Origin: Octopus sinensis
Taxonomy: Eukaryota
Direction: 5' to 3'
Length of the DNA stretch: 50,486 nucleotides
Assembly (NCBI RefSeq): GCF_006345805.1
Contig: NW_021835132.1
Location: 1-50,486, forward strand
Position numbers and translations under genes: made by a program. Under the pieces are notes generated by a model. It was not told the DNA's origin. It searched no databases and saw only the letters and a program-made list of their open reading frames with translations. Positions 5,160 through 36,292 of the stretch are shown here, one piece after another (position 1 is the stretch's first letter; each line of letters opens with the position of its first letter).

Positions 5160-5700
5160 GGCTTGACCACCTCCTGTACCTATAACTTAGAACCATCATG
5201 GCATCTGATATGGCTTTTTAAAACAAAGTTTTGAAAAGACACACACATCGTTAGCATATCCGATTTCTTTTGTCAGTTCTCGATTGGTTTTACGTGTATC
5301 TCTCCCAATTACGATCTGTAGTTGACCATCCTCGATGAGAGATGGGCATCCACTACGCTTACGATCATGAAGGCTCAGGTCTCCACTACAAAATCGTTTA
5401 AACTATTTTCGAGCTGACCACTCTCTGCTCATTTCCTCACCAAACGTTTCGTTGATATCGCGAGCAGTTTCAATAGCAAAATTGCTCGAATATCGCGCTT
5501 CGACAATTTCATTTTAGATGATTGTAACAACTGTGAAAAATAAAAAATCAATTTATTGATGCATTTGGGAAAGTCTATGACTATATTATCAGACAATTGC
5601 AAAAAAAAATGTTTTAAAAGATTCAAAACTCTGCAAAAATCCGGTATAAATTCTTCATGGTTCAAAACGTTGTTTACTTTTTATTCAACTTGACATGTAT
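5160..5700 (-). pseudogene. Mariner transposase 5' remnant (HTH region)
   Basis: Minus-strand MKLSKRDIRAILL from 5512, then frameshifted FKRFCSGDLSLHDRKRSGCPS, which matches the mariner WF.RF..GD.SL.D..RSGRP motif. Ends are uncertain. Confidence 0.75.
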
Positions 5701-5713
5701 GTATGCTTGTATG

Positions 5714-5747
<34 letters not shown>

Positions 5748-5805
5748 TGTATGTATGTATGTATATATATATTCATGTATATGTAAACATACATATATGT
5801 ATGTG

Positions 5806-5853
<48 letters not shown>

Positions 5854-5863
5854 TATAACATAT

Positions 5864-6072
5864 TTGACCACGTGTCTATCGTTAGAGATTTTCTTTCTCC
5901 GTCTTCCCTTCCTTGGACCTTTCTTTTTTCTATGTTTCTGATGAAGAGCTCCGCTCGAAACGTTAAACCCTCCTTCTTTCTTTCCTTTCCTGAGCGTTCA
6001 ATAACACTATACTTGCTCCACGTCCTCGCGTTGTTGTGTTTTCTCTTTGTGTTTTCATGTTTGGATTAACTA
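5864..6072 (+). mobile_element. Repeat family E (~210 bp), hammerhead-bearing non-autonomous element in a (TA)n array
   Basis: Homologous copies at 6528-6736, 33334-33497(-) and 35874-36083, with shared ends and TA-rich flanks. Confidence 0.85.
5934..5968 (+). ncRNA. Minimal type I hammerhead ribozyme motif; predicted cleavage after 5964
   Basis: GTTT-CTGATGA-A-GAGC(TCC)GCTC-GAAA-C-GTT-AAAC: full core, stem I GUUU/AAAC, stem II GAGC/GCUC, loopless palindromic stem III ACGU. Activity is untested. Confidence 0.75.
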
Positions 6073-6203
6073 TGTATATGTATATATATACATACCATGT
6101 ATCCTATTTACATTCATACACATATTGCTCCCCATCTATGTATGTATGTATGTATGTATGTATGATGTATGTATGTATGTATGTATGTATGTATGTATGT
6201 ATG

Positions 6204-6249
<46 letters not shown>

Positions 6250-6485
6250 ACAAGCAGTATATCTATCTATTTATATATTTATATATTTGTGTGCGTGCAT
6301 GGATTGTAAATGAATTCATTATAAGTCTATCTGCATGCGTGTAATTAAATTCACAAAATTAACAAATTTGAAACACACTCACTCACACACACATGTATAT
6401 ATATAAGATGATGAATGTATATCTAATATGCATGTATCTATGTATTTGTATATAGAAATGTGTAGATGTATATGTACGTATATAA

Positions 6486-6527
<42 letters not shown>

Positions 6528-6736
6528 TTGACCACGTGTCTATCGTTAGAGATTTTCTTTCTCCGTCTTCCCTTCCTTGGACCTTTCTTTTTTCTATGTT
6601 TCTGATGAAGAGCTCCGCTCGAAACGTTAAACCCTCCTTCTTTCTTTCCTTTCCTGAGCGTTCAATAACACTATACTTGCTCCACGTCCTCGCGTTGTTG
6701 TGTTTTCTCTTTGTGTTTTCATGTTTGGATTAACTA
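6528..6736 (+). mobile_element. Repeat family E, second tandem copy
   Basis: Appears identical to 5864-6072, offset 664 bp. Confidence 0.85.
6598..6632 (+). ncRNA. Minimal type I hammerhead ribozyme motif; predicted cleavage after 6628
   Basis: Same motif as 5934-5968. Confidence 0.75.
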
Positions 6737-6872
6737 TGTATATGTATATATATACATACCATGTATCCTATTTACATTCATACACATATTGCTCCCCATC
6801 TATGTATGTATGTATGTATGTATGTATGTATGTATGTATGTATGTATGTATGTATGTATGTATGTATGTATG

Positions 6873-6922
<50 letters not shown>

Positions 6923-8076
6923 ACAAGCAGTATATCTATCTATTTATATATTTATATATTTGTGTGCGTGCATGGATTGTAAATGAATTCATTATAAGTC
7001 TATCTGCATGCGTGTAATTAAATTCACAAAATTAACAAATTTGAAACACACTCACTCACACACACATGTATATATATAAGATGATGAATGTATATCTAAT
7101 ATGCATGTATCTATGTATTTGTATATAGAAATGTGTAGATGTATATGTACGTATATAAATGTGTATATATATATATATATATATACATTCGTATCTATGT
7201 GTTCAAATAGACACACACACATACTTGCACACAAAGATACGTACATAGAAACACAGCCAAGCAGAGTAATGGATATAGTAGCGGTCGGTTGCAATTATCT
7301 AACGTTGAGTTTGCTAATGCAAGTAAAACAAATTAAATACTGCAGTGATAAACACTCCATAGTCAACAACGAACAACAATAGCAATAAAAACAACAACAG
7401 CAACAGAATATTTAACAATCTTAGTATTGTTAAAAGTGAACTTTGTGAGGAATTTTAATCAAAACTTTTTAACCGAACAGACAGATTGAGGCCAGAGCGT
7501 GTCGCAAATTGAATAACTAACAAGACGAGTGAAGTGAGAGAGAGACAGAGATAGAGGGAGAGACATGAAGAGAAAGAAGAGCGTGGGTGAGAGAGAAAAA
7601 CACAGTGAAACGGAGAGAGAGAGGGAGGGAAAGAGGGAAGGAGAGAGAGAGAGAAATCCTGATAAGGAAAGATTGAACGATTAACTTGTCTTGATGGCTG
7701 CCGGTTCTTTGCTTAGCTGAATCAATGAATGAGTGAAAATCACTAAACCAACCAACCAACCAACCAACCAACCAACCTACAAACAAATAAATGGAATTAT
7801 TATCAAATAACAATGACGGGATTAAAATGATATTGTTTTGTAACGTTAATTATATTTCTACGTTTTTATTATCGATTTTGAAAAAAAAAAAATTTTTTTT
7901 TGTTTTTTTTTTTTGAAACCAAAAACTGTTAATTAAATTTTATCATACCCATCAGTGACTTTTGATATCGTTGTTGCTGTTATTAAGCCCAGTAATGATT
8001 ATTCTGAACTCTCATCAAAGGTGGTTTTAGCCATAACCATCATGTCTTTTATACAGACAACGTATCTAAGACTACC

Positions 8077-8675
8077 TATTTCTTTACTACCCACAGGGGG
8101 CTAAACACAGAGGGGACAAACAAGGACAAACAAACGGATTAAGTCGATTAAATCGACCCCAGTTCGTAACTGGTACTTAATTTATCAACCCCGAAAGGAT
8201 TAAAGGCAAAGTCGACCTCTGCGGAATATGAATTCAGAACGTAGCGGCAGACGAAATACCTATTTCTTTACTACCCACGGGGGGCTAAACACAGAGGGGA
8301 CAAACAGGGACAAACAAACGGATTAAGTCAATTAAATCGACCCCAGTTCGTAACTGGTACTTAATTTATCGACCCCGAAAGGATGAAAGGTAAAGTCGAC
8401 CTCGGCGGAATTTGAACCCAGAACGTAACGGCAGACGATATACCTATTTCTTTACTACCCACAAGGAGCTAAACACAGAGAGGACAAACAAGGACAGACA
8501 AACGGATTAAGTCGATTAAATCGACCCCAGTTCGTAACTGGTACTTAATTTATCGACCCCGAAAGGATGAAAGGCAAAGTCGACCTCGGCGGAATTTGAA
8601 CTCAGAACGCAGCGGCAGACGAAATACGGCTACGCATTTCACCCGGCGTGCTAACGATTCTGCCAGCTCGCAGCC
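8077..8675 (-). mobile_element. SINE family A, one head plus three ~184-bp units
   Basis: Tails (TATTTCTTTACTACCCAC) at 8077, 8261 and 8445; head at ~8620-8675. Confidence 0.9.
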
Positions 8676-15656: not shown

Positions 15657-16116
15657 TAAGAGAGAGAAGACATAGATAAAAATATGTGTGGACGTATGAA
15701 AATGCATGCATGTATATATCTGTAAATCATTGTATGGTTTTTTGCATGTATGTTTGTGAATATATGTACACACATACACACACACAAACACACACACACG
15801 CACACACACACTCACACACACACATGCACTCATATATAGGTATATAGATGGATAGATAGATTGATTGATAGGTATTGTATGATAGTATTTATGAGAAATG
15901 TATATGATTGTGCGTATGAATATAGACTTATAAGTATATATGTAAGCGGCAGGTGTGTGTATGTATATATATATATATGTGTGTATATATGTATATATGT
16001 ATATATATGAATATACATATATATACATGCAAACTCTCACATACACATACACACACATTTCTTCCTCAATAGTATCATGATTTCTAAGCAGGTTGTGGCA
16101 TCACAATTCAGATTCA

Positions 16117-16315
16117 AGACATCAACACCATCATCATCATCATCATCACAACCACCATCATCATCCTCATCATCATCATCATCATCACCACAACCACCAC
16201 CACCATCACCACCATCATCATGATCATCATAATCGTCATCATCATCATCACCACCACCATCATCATCTTCATCATCCTCATCATCATCACCATCATCATC
16301 ACCATCATCATCATC

Positions 16316-16347
<32 letters not shown>

Positions 16348-16595
16348 CATCATCATCACTATCAACATCATCATCATCATCATTATCATCATCACCATCA
16401 TCATCAACATCATCATCATCATCATCAATCATCACCATCATCATCATCATCATCATATCATCACTATCAACATCATCATCATCATCATTATCATCATCAC
16501 CATCATCATCATCATCATCATATCATCATCATCATCATCATCATCATCACCATCATCACCATCATCATCATCATCACCACCACCATCACCACCGC

Positions 16596-16632
<37 letters not shown>

Positions 16633-16730
16633 GTGGTCGTCGTCGTCGTCATCGTCGTCGTTAACAACAACAATAACTACAACAACAACTACAACAACAA
16701 CAGCAACAACAACAGCAGCAACAACAAAAT
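16117..16730. repeat. Large compound trinucleotide array (CAT/CAC)n grading into (CGT)n and (CAA)n
   Basis: Directly visible; source of the poly-H/I/S/D/M ORFs. Confidence 0.97.
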
Positions 16731-17562
16731 CATCTTCAGAAGCCATCAAAACCGGATGTTGATTTAATCAAAATTACATCACCTGGAGAAAACTAAGCTT
16801 AAGATTCCCATTATTAATTCCCACGTTCCCCGACACATTTAGTTCCAATTAACTACCCAACTCCCTGTAGCCTTAGACATTTCCATGAAAATGTGATGTT
16901 GCAGTGAAAATGCATCATTTTGAAAGGCTGAACGTTAGCGATTTGGTCAGAGGTGAGATTGTGAAGGAATTCAAAGTTAGTTCTGCATTATGACTTGATT
17001 CCTGTTTTTGTCACTTCCTGATGAGAGTTATGCTGCTGCAGGTATCAAATAATCTTTGAATGGTTTCGTTCAGAAGGAGACTACATCAGAAACTGACGGA
17101 CCCAGCACCGAATGTCACTGAGCAGTAATGGCGCCTAAGATATGGACAAACATACGAGAGTACATACAACTATACATATATGTGTGTATGTGTGTGTGTG
17201 TGTATAGCGAAAGAGAGAGAGAGAGAGAGAGAGAGAGTGACAGACAGACAGACAGACAGATAGAGAGAGATGCAGATAGACGTACATACACATGCATTAT
17301 ATTCGTGTATAGATATAAACCTACATATATACAGTCAATTTATAATTTGCTCAATATGTACGTATCAAATTACGTTATACGAATAAAAAGTAGAGAAGAA
17401 CACGGACACATAATATATATATATATATTATATATATATATATAATATATATATATATATATACATACATACATACATACATATATATGTATAAATATAC
17501 ACACATATATATATGTACACATACATAAATACATATACACACAAACACACATATATATATAT

Positions 17563-22330: not shown

Positions 22331-22525
22331 TTGAAGTTTACAGTAAAACAAAAGACGAAGGCAGCTGTATGAAGAACAAGCAAGTGTATTAGTCTGACAC
22401 TTGGGAAAAATGAGAGTCTTTTACTTTTCGAGCCTATGCTCTTTAACAGAGAGGAAATTAACAGAGAGAGAAATAAAAAAGAAACTTGTGGATTTAGCGA
22501 TCAATCATGGCGACTGTATATAACT
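22331..22525 (-). mobile_element. Repeat family G with a degenerate hammerhead motif (22417-22452)
   Basis: Minus strand reads CTCT-CTGTTAA-A-GAGC(ATAG)GCTC-GAAA-A-GTA-AAAG; TA-rich flanks. Confidence 0.6.
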
Positions 22526-22899
22526 ATATGCATACACATGCATACGCACACACATATATACGCGTGTGTGTATGCATCTAAGAAGATGACTTAGAGTTTA
22601 GTTTTAATAAGAGTGTAGGGCACGACGCTCTCATCAGATGTTAGGAGTCAACATTTTATTAAAGTTCTATAACTGCAACCAAATGTGTTCAAAGTTACTT
22701 TCTTTCGTTTCTAACACACTCGTATAAACACACATATACTCACACAAACACACACACATACTTATATATAAATACACAGATGTCTATATTATATTCATAT
22801 ATGCATATATACGCGTGTTAATTGTAATAAGAGAAAGACAACGCAAACATCCGCAATCGAGAGCGACCATACACTCATTTTAAAGAGAATATATGCATA

Positions 22900-24330
22900 C
22901 ATATACATACATATACACACACATACATGCATATACATATACATAAATATTTATACATTTATACATACATATATAAACACATACATGCATTCATACATAA
23001 ACACATGTATGCATACATACACACATGAATGCATACATACACGCATGCATGCATATATATACAAACGTGCACGCATACACACATGCATGCATACATACAT
23101 ACACACATTTATAAATACACACATGCAGGCATACACGCATACATATATACACACATGCATGCATACACACATATGCATGCATATAAACATTCATACATAC
23201 ATATATGAATACATACATACATTCATATATACATGCATGCATGCGTACATACATTTATACACACATACATACATACATACATACATACATACACGCGTAC
23301 ATACATACATACATACATACATACATGCGTACATACATACATTCACACATAAATACACACATGCATACACACATGTATGCATACATACATATACACATGC
23401 ATGCATTCATATAGACATTTATACATACATACACACACACACACATACATACATACATACATACATACATACATACATACATACATACAGACATACATAC
23501 ACACATACATACATACGCACATACATATATACAACAAAACGAAAGTAAGGCTGTTAGTGGTTGTGTTCCCTTCATGTCTGAGTATATTTGTAATTTGGAG
23601 TCGCTGGTAATAAATGGTCTTCACTCTCACAAAATAATTACAAAGTAAATATCATTCTTGTTTATCGAAAGTGTTTGGGAAGCTCTTTATCTTCTCTCCC
23701 TTTCTGAATACATACATACATACATGAATACATTCATGCATACATACATGCATACATACACACATGCATACATACATACATACATACATATATACATACA
23801 TACTTATATACATACATACATATATACATACGTACATACATACATACAAGCATACATACATACATACATACATACATACATACATACATCATACATACAG
23901 ACAGACATACATACATACATACATATATACATACACACATACATATATACATTCATGCATACATACATGCATACATACATACAGACATACATACATACAT
24001 TCATACATACAAACATACATACATACATATATACATACATACATATATACATACACACATACATATATACATTCATGCATACATACATGCATACATGCAT
24101 ACATACAGACATACATATATACATGCATACATACATGCATGAATGCATACATACACACATTCATACATACATACATGCATGCATGCATGCATGCATGCAT
24201 ACATACGTACTTACATACATACATATATACATACACACATACATATATACATACATACATACATACTTACATACATACATATGTGCGTGTGCATATGTGT
24301 GTGTGACTATGTGGGCATATGTGTGTTCAT
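22900..24330. repeat. Two long degenerate (TACA)n/(TGCA)n arrays separated by ~170 bp of unique DNA
   Basis: Directly visible; includes a ~120-bp higher-order repeat near 23920/24040. Confidence 0.95.
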
Positions 24331-24864
24331 ATATGTGTGAAGAGTATACATACAAACATGCACGTTCCCACGCAGTTTCTCATAAAAACACAGCAATACA
24401 TTTCAATACCCCCAATCACACATGTAATTTGATATCGCAAAACACTCACACACACACACACACACACACAAGCACGCACATTTATATACTATTATATATA
24501 ACTACACCCGTTGCATCCAATACTAATTTGGCAGCAAGTACCATGCTTTCGCTAATTGCTTCAGGTTTCCTATATAGTCGCGTGCAGAGATAAGCTCTCA
24601 AGTAATCCGCTCTAATGAACCCAAATATCTTGTCTGGTAGAGCTGGACAAACAAGGAACTGATCAGCGAATAGTTCGTACTTACTTCAGTAATGAAGATT
24701 AGAGCTATGTAAAAATGATGTGCCTTAAAAAGGCATACGCTTTCAAGAATCGAATCCAGGACGTAGGGTTTTGAGCCCAGTAACCTAACCACTAAGCTAC
24801 GTACTTATTTAAGGAATTGAGGTTGACAATGCACTTATATATATTTATGCTAACACACGCATAT

Positions 24865-33283: not shown

Positions 33284-33333
<50 letters not shown>

Positions 33334-33338
<5 letters not shown>

Positions 33339-33494
33339 ATCCAAACATGAAAGCACAAAAAAAAACACAACAACACGAGGAGGTGGAACAAATATAGTAT
33401 TATTGGACGCTCAGGAGAAGAGGAAAGAAGGGGGGTTTAACGTTTCGAGTGGAGAAGGAAAGATCCAGAGAAGGGAAGAGAGAGGAAAACAATC

Positions 33495-35873: not shown

Positions 35874-35876
<3 letters not shown>

Positions 35877-36083
35877 ACCTCGTGAGTACCGCTGGCGATT
35901 TTTTTCCTCTGTCTTCCCTTCTCGGGATCTTTCCTTCTCTTATGTTTCCGACGAAGAGCTCCGCTCGAAACGTCAAACCCTCCTTCTTCCCTTCTTTCCC
36001 GAGCGTCCAATAATACTTTATTTTTGTTTCCACGTCCTCGCGTTGTTGTTTATTTTTGTGTGTTTTCTTTGTTTGGATTAACT
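35874..36083 (+). mobile_element. Repeat family E with a variant hammerhead (CCGACGA core, GUC site; 35944-35978)
   Basis: GTTT-CCGACGA-A-GAGC(TCC)GCTC-GAAAC-GTC-AAAC; (TA)n flanks. Confidence 0.85.
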
Positions 36084-36292
36084 TTATATATATAATACTA
36101 TATATATAATATATATTATATAGATATAAACATAATATAACATATGGAAGACGCCATAAATCTTTTAGCTACGAGTTTTACTGTCCTACAAAAGAATTAT
36201 TTCACAACTATTGCTATTATGTATAGTGTATAATAGTAGAAGTGATGATATATGTACACAGATAAGAATTATATTCTTCTTACTGTACACAG

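What the first reader, a model, noticed from the sequence alone, without database searches (positions are those of the whole stretch)
5864..6736. Tandem pair of intact minimal hammerhead ribozymes: candidate dimeric retrozyme
Seen: two identical motifs GUUU-CUGAUGA-A-GAGC(UCC)GCUC-GAAAC-GUU/AAAC, same strand, 664 nt apart, in a non-coding ~210-bp repeat family. Established: type I hammerheads with a loopless palindromic stem III (ACGU) cannot fold as monomers, but such Penelope-associated variants cleave as dimers. An extra A between A9 and G10.1 is tolerated (CChMVd hammerhead), and tandem hammerhead repeats (retrozymes) release monomers that circularise. Inference: a transcript across this locus could form a double hammerhead in cis and excise a 664-nt RNA (5965-6628). 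If the locus is intronic and sense to a host gene, it could also cut the pre-mRNA. I cannot confirm whether this family is already described in cephalopods.
Basis: partly seen in the sequence, partly recalled or inferred. Interest (0 to 1): 0.9.

Follow-up and report, generated by a model that had tools for sequence, protein, structure and literature searches.

The report
Duplicated hammerhead-bearing octopus repeat
The two hammerhead-ribozyme motifs are real, but they sit in two copies of an old, very abundant non-coding repeat of a known kind (Penelope-type minimal hammerheads), placed side by side by a recent local duplication rather than forming a mobile "retrozyme" unit.

Summary
Two identical 35-nt motifs (5934-5968 and 6598-6632, + strand, 664 nt apart) carry every conserved hammerhead core nucleotide, 4-bp helices I and II, a loopless palindromic helix III (ACGU) and an extra A between A9 and G10.1. 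These are the published hallmarks of minimal hammerheads of Penelope-like elements (PLEs).

The motif belongs to the consensus of a ~210-230-bp non-coding dispersed repeat, which I call E. E has more than 11,000 copies in this 2.72-Gb genome, and an estimated ~2,100 still carry a complete motif.

The 664-nt tandem itself is not a mobile unit:
- Its spacer includes 154 nt found nowhere else in the genome.
- The two units show no substitution outside microsatellites, yet each E copy is about 5-8% diverged from its subfamily consensus.
- The unit is bounded by (TA)n tracts.

It is therefore a recent local duplication, or possibly an assembly artefact on an unplaced 50-kb scaffold.

Catalysis is unproven, and several results urge caution. 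A large E subfamily has G17. A fivefold more abundant sister family (E2) has U at core position 6. Predicted folds favour inactive pairings. No PLE partner was found.

Verdict: a new cephalopod member of a known kind, of modest interest.

The parts
5864..6072 (+). Copy 1 of dispersed repeat family E (short form), from GTGACC-like start to GGATTAACTA end
   Evidence: homology with 30 genomic copies is confined to about 5860-6094. About 92% identity to the subfamily-A consensus.
5934..5968 (+). Minimal type-I hammerhead motif 1; predicted cleavage between 5964 and 5965
   Evidence: all core nucleotides, helices I and II of 4 bp each, loopless ACGU helix III, bulged A5945, U17.
6528..6736 (+). 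Copy 2 of family E, 100% identical to copy 1
6598..6632 (+). Minimal type-I hammerhead motif 2; predicted cleavage between 6628 and 6629
5864..7185 (+). Local tandem duplication: unit 1 at 5864-6527 and unit 2 at 6528-7185 (phase arbitrary within the (TA)n). Each unit is E + microsatellites + unique DNA + (TA)n.
   Evidence: the only differences are a 9-nt indel and one substitution inside the (TATG)n/(TATC)n tract. Homology ends inside the (TA)n at 7185.
6247..6400 (.). Locus-specific spacer (repeated at 6920-7073), not part of any repeat family
   Evidence: in the whole genome only these two full-length matches. Other hits cover 47 nt or less.
5695..5863 (.). (TATG)n/(TA)n microsatellite upstream of unit 1. 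Equivalent (TA)n tracts at 6479-6527 and 7106-7185 bound the units.
   Evidence: Microsatellites flank 13 of 26 upstream and 14 of 24 downstream ends of family copies, against about 13% background.
35875..36091 (+). Decayed copy of family E with a broken core (CCGACGA, U4 to C)
33311..33454 (-). 5'-truncated copy of family E starting inside helix II; no hammerhead
22345..22509 (-). Decayed copy of sister family E2 (hammerhead-like motif with U at core position 6)

Best explanation
The locus holds two copies of an old, non-autonomous, non-coding retroelement-like repeat (family E). E exists as a short form of about 210-230 bp and a long form with a CA-rich 5' extension of 450 bp or more. Its consensus carries a Penelope-type minimal type-I hammerhead motif. 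One E copy inserted long ago next to or into a (TA)n microsatellite. Much later a 664-bp segment (E + microsatellites + 154 bp of unique DNA + (TA)n) was duplicated in place, most simply by unequal exchange or slippage between the flanking (TA)n tracts. The two hammerhead motifs are therefore identical by recent descent, not because the pair is a functional unit.

Inferred mechanism for the family: in source copies the motif, which cannot close helix III alone, pairs with a second copy through the ACGU palindrome. This happens in read-through or multimeric transcripts. It cleaves after U17 and gives unit-length RNA that a PLE reverse transcriptase/GIY-YIG endonuclease copies into microsatellite targets.

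At this locus a transcript spanning both copies could do the same and release a 664-nt RNA (5965-6628), but that would be incidental. Shown here: the motif, the family, the copy numbers, the uniqueness of the spacer, the identity of the units and the microsatellite association. Inferred: PLE mobilisation, cleavage and any transcription.
For: Motif and chance.

Family extent and forms.

Abundance:
- 14,004 matches within 2 mismatches of the 24-mer.
- 11,767 exact matches of the 16-mer.
- 3,068 exact cores with N7 free, of which 70 of 100 sampled are fully hammerhead-compatible.

The window's U7 is the minority state. 85% of exact cores have C7 in a CpG, which fits a decayed old copy.

Spacer unique. 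Units identical outside microsatellites. W1 is 92.3% identical to the subfamily consensus, and other copies average 89.4%.

A second array elsewhere (L033, period about 566) also consists of E plus a locus-specific TA-rich spacer, with units 98.5-99% identical.

PLE-type hallmarks, dimer requirement and dispersed single copies are described in PMC4209133 and PMC6765202. Microsatellite targeting by PLEs is in Craig et al. 2021 and is seen here.

PLEs are abundant in this genome: at least 4,846 GIY-YIG candidates and ORFs up to 883 aa.

There are 41 tight head-to-tail E dimers (period 216-277), against about 1.6 expected from the density of the 16-mer.

Helix I is supported by A-U/G-U/G-C variation within E and by a G-C to C-G swap in sister family E2.
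Against: - No PLE carrying an E-like terminal repeat was found. The one intact PLE examined (L071) has no hammerhead and no similarity to E. PLE fragments beside E in L002 and L010 prove nothing.
- Target-site duplications could not be discerned.
- Copies do not conserve the hammerhead better than the flanks. In a sample not chosen on the motif, only 3 of 32 are fully compatible.
- The long-form consensus has G17, which the NUH rule (established knowledge) predicts to be uncleavable.
- Sister family E2, about five times more abundant, has U6 in 99 of 100 copies. Amplification therefore does not obviously need a canonical core.
- ViennaRNA prefers an inactive GUUUC/GAAAC hairpin for the monomer (-6.0 kcal/mol) and an extended duplex for the dimer (-21.7 kcal/mol).
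- Gene conversion could also make the two units identical.
Confidence: 0.72

Rival explanations
1. True dimeric retrozyme: the 664-nt cleavage-to-cleavage unit is itself a mobile element, inserted as a multimer by rolling-circle reverse transcription of a circular RNA or by PLE-style tandem insertion.
For: Two intact same-strand hammerheads lie 664 nt apart. Non-LTR retrozyme consensus lengths of 51-972 bp are reported. Tight E dimers and a trimer exist elsewhere. Two pairs of the sister family E2 lie 632 and 662 nt apart.
Against: The 154-nt spacer core occurs nowhere else in 2.72 Gb. None of 30 family loci shares the spacer. There are zero substitutions between the units, although each E is about 5-8% from consensus. 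An insertion-time dimer of that age should differ at roughly 10% of sites.
Confidence: 0.05
2. Relic or non-catalytic module: the hammerhead-like sequence is inherited from a PLE-type ancestor but no longer cleaves in this superfamily. It persists by descent or serves another role, for example dimerisation or recognition by the reverse transcriptase.
For: G17 is the consensus of subfamily B. U6 is the consensus of the larger family E2, with canonical A6 in only 166 of 15,159 copies. Competing folds are predicted to be more stable. PLE minimal hammerheads show low activity in vitro even as dimers. Naiad PLEs proliferate without hammerheads.
Against: The dominant intact E subfamily keeps a fully canonical core with U17 and 4-bp helix I (72 of 100). 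Helix I shows a compensatory swap between E and E2. In E2 the two positions the consensus leaves free (N7, H17) vary, and G17 is never seen (0 of 100).
Confidence: 0.3
3. Assembly artefact: the tandem is a mis-joined pair of alleles or reads on a small unplaced scaffold, and the genome holds one copy.
For: The window is the whole of a 50,486-bp unplaced contig. The units are identical except for microsatellite length. Another unplaced contig duplicates chromosome sequence at 100% identity.
Against: The units differ in (TATG)n length and the junctions are clean (TA)n tracts, as expected for a real slippage or unequal-exchange product. A similar high-identity array sits on a chromosome-scale contig.
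Confidence: 0.15
4. Family E is mobilised by a LINE (a SINE-like element with a microsatellite tail) rather than by a PLE, and the hammerhead merely trims read-through transcripts.
For: E has a defined 5' end, some 5'-truncated copies and a 3' (TA)n/(TATG)n tail. Hammerhead-bearing SINE-like elements exist in schistosomes.
Against: No tRNA, 5S or other pol III head was found. The hammerhead has the PLE-specific traits. Seven of nine 3'-truncated copies end 12-47 nt after the cleavage site, reminiscent of the 30-40-bp PLE 'tail'. Head-to-tail dimers are in excess.
Confidence: 0.15

Closest known systems
Minimal hammerheads (min-HHRs) of Penelope-like elements, dispersed as single motifs in metazoan genomes (Cervera & De la Pena 2014, PMC4209133; Lunse et al. 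2017 as cited in PMC6765202)
   Same: Type I topology, no helix III loop with palindromic 15.2-16.2, an unpaired nucleotide between 9 and 10.1, G10.1-C11.1, a 4-bp helix I with no defined loop 1, thousands of mostly solitary copies grouped in consensus families, and an expected need for dimerisation.
   Different: Helix II is only 4 bp with a 3-nt loop, whereas the schistosome PLE motifs have 7-8 bp. No flanking RT/GIY-YIG ORF was found for this family. The host is a cephalopod, for which I found no published description.
Non-LTR retrozymes of animals (Cervera & de la Pena 2020, PMC7229834; Li, Clavereau & Pollet 2026 preprint)
   Same: Non-autonomous, non-coding, AT-rich, type-I hammerhead per unit, monomers plus some head-to-tail multimers, co-existing with PLEs and proposed to derive from PLE terminal repeats.
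   Different: Over 98% of E copies are solitary. The classical retrozyme hammerheads are canonical, with loop-loop contacts, and cleave efficiently. The 664-nt unit of this window includes unique DNA and is not a family unit. No RNA evidence is available.
Sm-alpha / Sj-alpha SINE-like elements of schistosomes with hammerheads (Ferbeyre 1998; Laha 2000, cited in PMC6765202)
   Same: A short, abundant, dispersed non-coding repeat with an internal hammerhead.
   Different: Those carry a pol III promoter and a canonical hammerhead. E shows no tRNA-like head.
CChMVd (+) hammerhead with an extra A between A9 and G10.1 (De la Pena & Flores 2001, cited in PMC4209133)
   Same: An extra unpaired nucleotide at the same core position, tolerated for catalysis.
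   Different: A viroid type III ribozyme with stable helices. The resemblance is limited to that one position.

Membership tests
Hammerhead ribozyme (type I, minimal/PLE variant) | Conserved core C3 U4 G5 A6 N7 G8 A9 / G12 A13 A14 / A15.1-U16.1 / H17 | tested here: met
   CUGAUGA, GAA, A15.1, U16.1 and U17 are all present in both copies.
Hammerhead ribozyme (type I, minimal/PLE variant) | Helices I and II with G10.1-C11.1; palindromic 15.2-16.2; unpaired nucleotide between 9 and 10.1 (PLE hallmarks, PMC4209133) | tested here: met
   GUUU/AAAC, GAGC/GCUC, ACGU and bulged A5945.
Hammerhead ribozyme (type I, minimal/PLE variant) | Covariation supporting the helices | tested here: inconclusive
   only pair 2.4/1.4 varies on both sides (AU 31, GU 22, GC 16). 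Helix II has no compensatory change. Between families, helix I swaps G-C to C-G. These are few independent events.
Hammerhead ribozyme (type I, minimal/PLE variant) | Match to curated covariance models (Rfam Hammerhead_1 and others) | tested here: not met
   no hammerhead hit even at E<=10. I attribute this to the missing helix III loop, so it is weak evidence against.
Hammerhead ribozyme (type I, minimal/PLE variant) | Site-specific self-cleavage | not testable with these tools
   Thermodynamic folding favours inactive alternatives only. The kissing-type double hammerhead cannot be evaluated by nested-structure programs.
Penelope-like element terminal repeat (pLTR) | Direct repeats flanking an RT + GIY-YIG ORF | tested here: inconclusive
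   PLEs are abundant. The one intact PLE fetched has no E or hammerhead. E lies next to PLE fragments in L002 and L010 without a pLTR arrangement.
Penelope-like element terminal repeat (pLTR) | Insertion bias for microsatellites / tandem or adjacent insertion | tested here: met
   (about 50% of ends in microsatellites against 13% background). (41 tight dimers against about 1.6 expected). (E abutting E2).
Non-LTR retrozyme | Head-to-tail tandem repeats whose whole unit is the family sequence | tested here: not met
   For this locus the unit contains unique DNA. For the family, tight dimers exist but involve under 1% of copies.
Non-LTR retrozyme | Expression as linear and circular unit-length RNA | not testable with these tools
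SINE (pol III, tRNA/5S-derived) | tRNA-, 5S- or 7SL-related head with internal promoter | tested here: not met
   ARAGORN finds nothing. Rfam at the E-value threshold on three long-form loci gives no tRNA or 5S hit within the element.

The most novel reading that the evidence does not exclude
E and E2 form a cephalopod superfamily of PLE-parasitic, retrozyme-like elements. Its most successful branch (E2, at least 15,000 exact copies) uses a hammerhead with U instead of A at core position 6. If that variant still cleaves as a dimer, it would be a new natural core variant of the hammerhead. If it does not, the module has been kept for a non-catalytic role such as RNA dimerisation or recognition by the reverse transcriptase. 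Under this reading, tandem pairs such as the one in this window would be sporadic sources of excised or circular RNA.
Probability: 0.12. Interest if true: 0.6.

Novelty: new member of a known kind. Interest (0 to 1): 0.3.

Why it matters
The result extends the known, massive spread of Penelope-type minimal hammerheads to a cephalopod genome. It gives a concrete, countable family: about 12,000 copies, roughly 2,000 of them with a complete motif. It also comes with internal natural experiments: a G17 subfamily and a larger sister family with U6. These bear on a long-standing question, namely whether these weakly active motifs are needed for the amplification of their elements. For this particular locus the practical message is negative. 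The tandem is a local duplication, so it should not be used as evidence for a 664-nt retrozyme.

Tried and rejected
- **Rfam.** Gathering and E-value thresholds on the window and on three family loci gave only microsatellite-driven miRNA false hits and no hammerhead.
- **PLE partner.** A GIY-YIG Pfam scan of the genome gave at least 4,846 candidates. One intact PLE was fetched (L071) and shows no hammerhead and no similarity to E.
- **PLE protein against all DNA in hand (tblastn).** Fragments lie near E in 6 loci, compatible with background density.
- **Target-site duplications.** The longest shared flank words are no longer than in mismatched controls, because microsatellites confound the test.
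- **Metagenome scan for the 24-mer.** No hits.
- **Energy of the double-hammerhead structure.** It cannot be evaluated as a nested structure because it is a kissing-type complex.
- **Window ORFs.** Only microsatellite translations, so no host gene could be assigned.
- **Lunse et al. 2017.** The paper is not held in the library, so I cite it through the review PMC6765202.
- **Rejected idea:** that the flanking (TA)n is internal sequence of a circularly permuted unit inserted as a 1.x-mer. No partial E fragments lie beyond the (TA)n in 29 of 30 loci.

Full report
**The observation.** The sequence at 5934-5968 reads GUUU-CUGAUGA-A-GAGC(UCC)GCUC-GAA-ACGU-U|AAAC, and the identical 35 nt recur at 6598-6632 on the same strand.
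- In hammerhead numbering this gives helix I (GUUU/AAAC), C3-A9, an extra A, helix II (GAGC/GCUC, with G10.1-C11.1), G12-A14, a loopless palindromic helix III (A15.1 C15.2 G16.2 U16.1) and U17.
- The 24-nt core occurs twice exactly, and once in decayed form, in the window, against none in shuffles.
- A generic minimal-hammerhead descriptor that I wrote hits only these two places in the window. All 16 of its hits in about 200 kb of other loci are family copies, and it hits nothing in about 20 Mb of simulated sequence.
- Rfam reports no hammerhead even at permissive thresholds. I attribute this to the absent helix III loop.

**The repeat family.** Comparison with 30 genomic loci retrieved through the core shows that homology is confined to about 5860-6094.
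- I call this element E. It starts at (CAATAT)GTGACCGCGTG and ends at TTGGATTRACTA followed by (TA)n or (TATG)n.
- A long form adds a CA-rich 5' extension of 450 nt or more.
- E has no ORF, no tRNA-like head and no Rfam match.
- The genome (2.72 Gb, 13,516 contigs; the window is an entire unplaced 50-kb contig) holds 14,004 matches within two mismatches of the 24-mer. It holds 11,767 exact copies of the 16-mer GAGCTCCGCTCGAAAC and 3,068 exact cores when N7 is left free.
- Among 100 of those exact cores, 85 have C7, 83 have U17, 13 have G17, and 70 are complete (ACGU, H17, 4-bp helix I). That extrapolates to roughly 2,100 complete motifs in the genome.
- The window's U7 is the minority state. 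It is what a C-to-T change at the C7-G8 CpG would give (inference).
- In 32 copies not selected on the motif, 14 keep the invariant core, 7 of those have G17, and only 3 are complete. The hammerhead segment is no better conserved than its flanks. Individual copies therefore decay neutrally, as expected for transposon copies.

**The tandem.**
- The two 664-nt units (5864-6527 and 6528-7185) differ only by a 9-nt indel and one substitution inside the (TATG)n/(TATC)n tract. There are no substitutions elsewhere.
- Homology ends inside the (TA)n at 7185, and an equivalent (TA)n precedes unit 1.
- Only about 210 nt of each unit is family sequence. The 154-nt core of the spacer (6247-6400) is found nowhere else in the genome, and none of 30 family loci shares it.
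- The E copy is 92.3% identical to a subfamily consensus, with about ten substitutions within the element proper. Other copies average 89.4%.
- A dimer made at insertion would by now differ at roughly one site in ten. Zero differences mean the duplication is far younger than the insertion. The alternatives are gene conversion or an assembly artefact.
- A trimer on a chromosome-scale contig (L033, period about 566) has the same make-up: E plus a locus-specific TA-rich spacer, with units 98.5-99% identical.
- I conclude that the pair is a local duplication between microsatellite tracts, not a mobile 664-nt retrozyme.

**The family's tendency to tandem copies.** Tight head-to-tail pairs with a period of 216-277 nt occur 41 times, against about 1.6 expected from copy density. 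E also abuts the sister element E2 directly in L014.
- Microsatellites flank about half of the element ends, against 13% of random positions.
- Seven of nine 3'-truncated copies end 12-47 nt after the predicted cleavage site.
- These traits recall PLE biology: insertion bias for microsatellites, tandem or adjacent insertions, and a 30-40-bp 'tail' (Craig et al. 2021; PMC6765202).
- PLEs are abundant here, with at least 4,846 GIY-YIG candidates and an intact 883-aa RT-EN ORF.
PLE mobilisation therefore remains an inference.

**Comparison with the literature.**
[quoted passage not shown] They report thousands of mostly solitary copies per metazoan genome, activity only as dimers, and low activity in vitro. 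The present motif fits all four traits apart from a short helix II.
- Animal non-LTR retrozymes are tandem, are expressed as circles, and are now argued to derive from PLE terminal repeats, with monomer fractions from 0 to 1.
- I found no paper describing hammerheads of this kind in octopus or other cephalopods. The giant squid genome paper lists only 235 Rfam Hammerhead_1 hits. I could not consult Repbase or Dfam.

**Cautions about catalysis.**
1. The long-form or subfamily-B consensus has G17. The NUH rule (established knowledge) predicts this to be uncleavable.
2. A sister family, E2, is homologous to E over its length and about five times more abundant (15,159 exact motifs). It has U at core position 6 in 99 of 100 copies, and canonical A6 in only 166 copies. 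It nevertheless keeps helix II, the bulged A, GAAA and ACGU. H17 is A 63, U 36, C 1 and G 0; N7 is freely variable; and helix I (CUUU/AAAG) is a compensatory G-C to C-G swap relative to E.
3. ViennaRNA predicts an inactive GUUUC/GAAAC hairpin for the monomer and an extended duplex for two copies.

Within-family covariation is weak. I therefore put the chance that E-type motifs cleave as dimers at about one half. I treat any excision of a 664-nt RNA at this locus as possible but incidental.

**Verdict.** The class assignment (Penelope-type minimal hammerhead in a non-coding repeat) is supported. The 'dimeric retrozyme' reading of this locus is not. This is a new cephalopod member of a known kind. 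The most interesting by-product is the E/E2 contrast: a canonical core against a U6 core.

Noticed in passing
window 22345-22509 (-); genome-wide; loci L008, L014, L020, L025, L028: Sister repeat family E2, homologous to E over about 190 nt. Its hammerhead-like motif is CUUU-CUGUNGA-A-GAGC(GUAG)GCUC-GAAAC-GU-H-AAAG. There are 15,159 exact copies. Core position 6 is U in 99 of 100, N7 takes all four bases, position 17 is never G, and helix I is compensated relative to E. Canonical A6 occurs in only 166 copies.
   Followed up: partly
loci L037-L065 (long-form copies) and genome sample: A large E subfamily (ATTT...GAAACGTG|AAAT, mostly the long form) has G at position 17 in its consensus, which should block cleavage, yet it amplified to many copies.
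   Followed up: partly
L002, L003, L004, L005, L009, L038, L062: Seven of nine 3'-truncated E copies end 12-47 nt downstream of the predicted cleavage site. This is reminiscent of the 30-40-bp 'tail' described for PLE insertion units. Some may instead be interrupted by other insertions (L009, L002).
   Followed up: partly
L014 (E 3' end directly followed by E2 5' end); L008 (E2-(TA)n(TG)n-E): E and E2 lie head to tail or share a microsatellite. 8 of 30 E loci hold an E2 copy within 1.5 kb, suggesting shared target preference or insertion next to earlier copies.
   Followed up: no
G000:C10:27566500-27574500 (L071) and one search list: Canonical-order Penelope-like element with an uninterrupted 883-aa RT + C-terminal GIY-YIG frame, ending in (TA)n. 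Many other loci have 775-781-aa open frames, so PLEs may have been active recently in this genome.
   Followed up: partly
L036 (G000:C9710:74786-75246) against L037 (G000:C1:154165199-154165659): An unplaced contig is 100% identical to chromosome-scale sequence over the 461-nt query. This shows assembly redundancy, which is relevant to the artefact question for the window's own unplaced contig.
   Followed up: no
window 8073-8627: Three tandem copies of a 184-nt unit (93% matches), apparently another interspersed-repeat-derived array.
   Followed up: no
window 1-50486, e.g. 16037-16767, 22772-24593: The scaffold is dominated by microsatellites and low-complexity tracts. Every ORF of 130 aa or more is a repeat translation, so no host gene is visible.
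   Followed up: partly
L035 1059-1096; G000:C1:14476432/14477094 and 14514174/14514806: E2 also forms same-strand pairs 632-662 nt apart, close to the 664-nt spacing in the window. Whether these are long-form tandems or local duplications was not examined.
   Followed up: no
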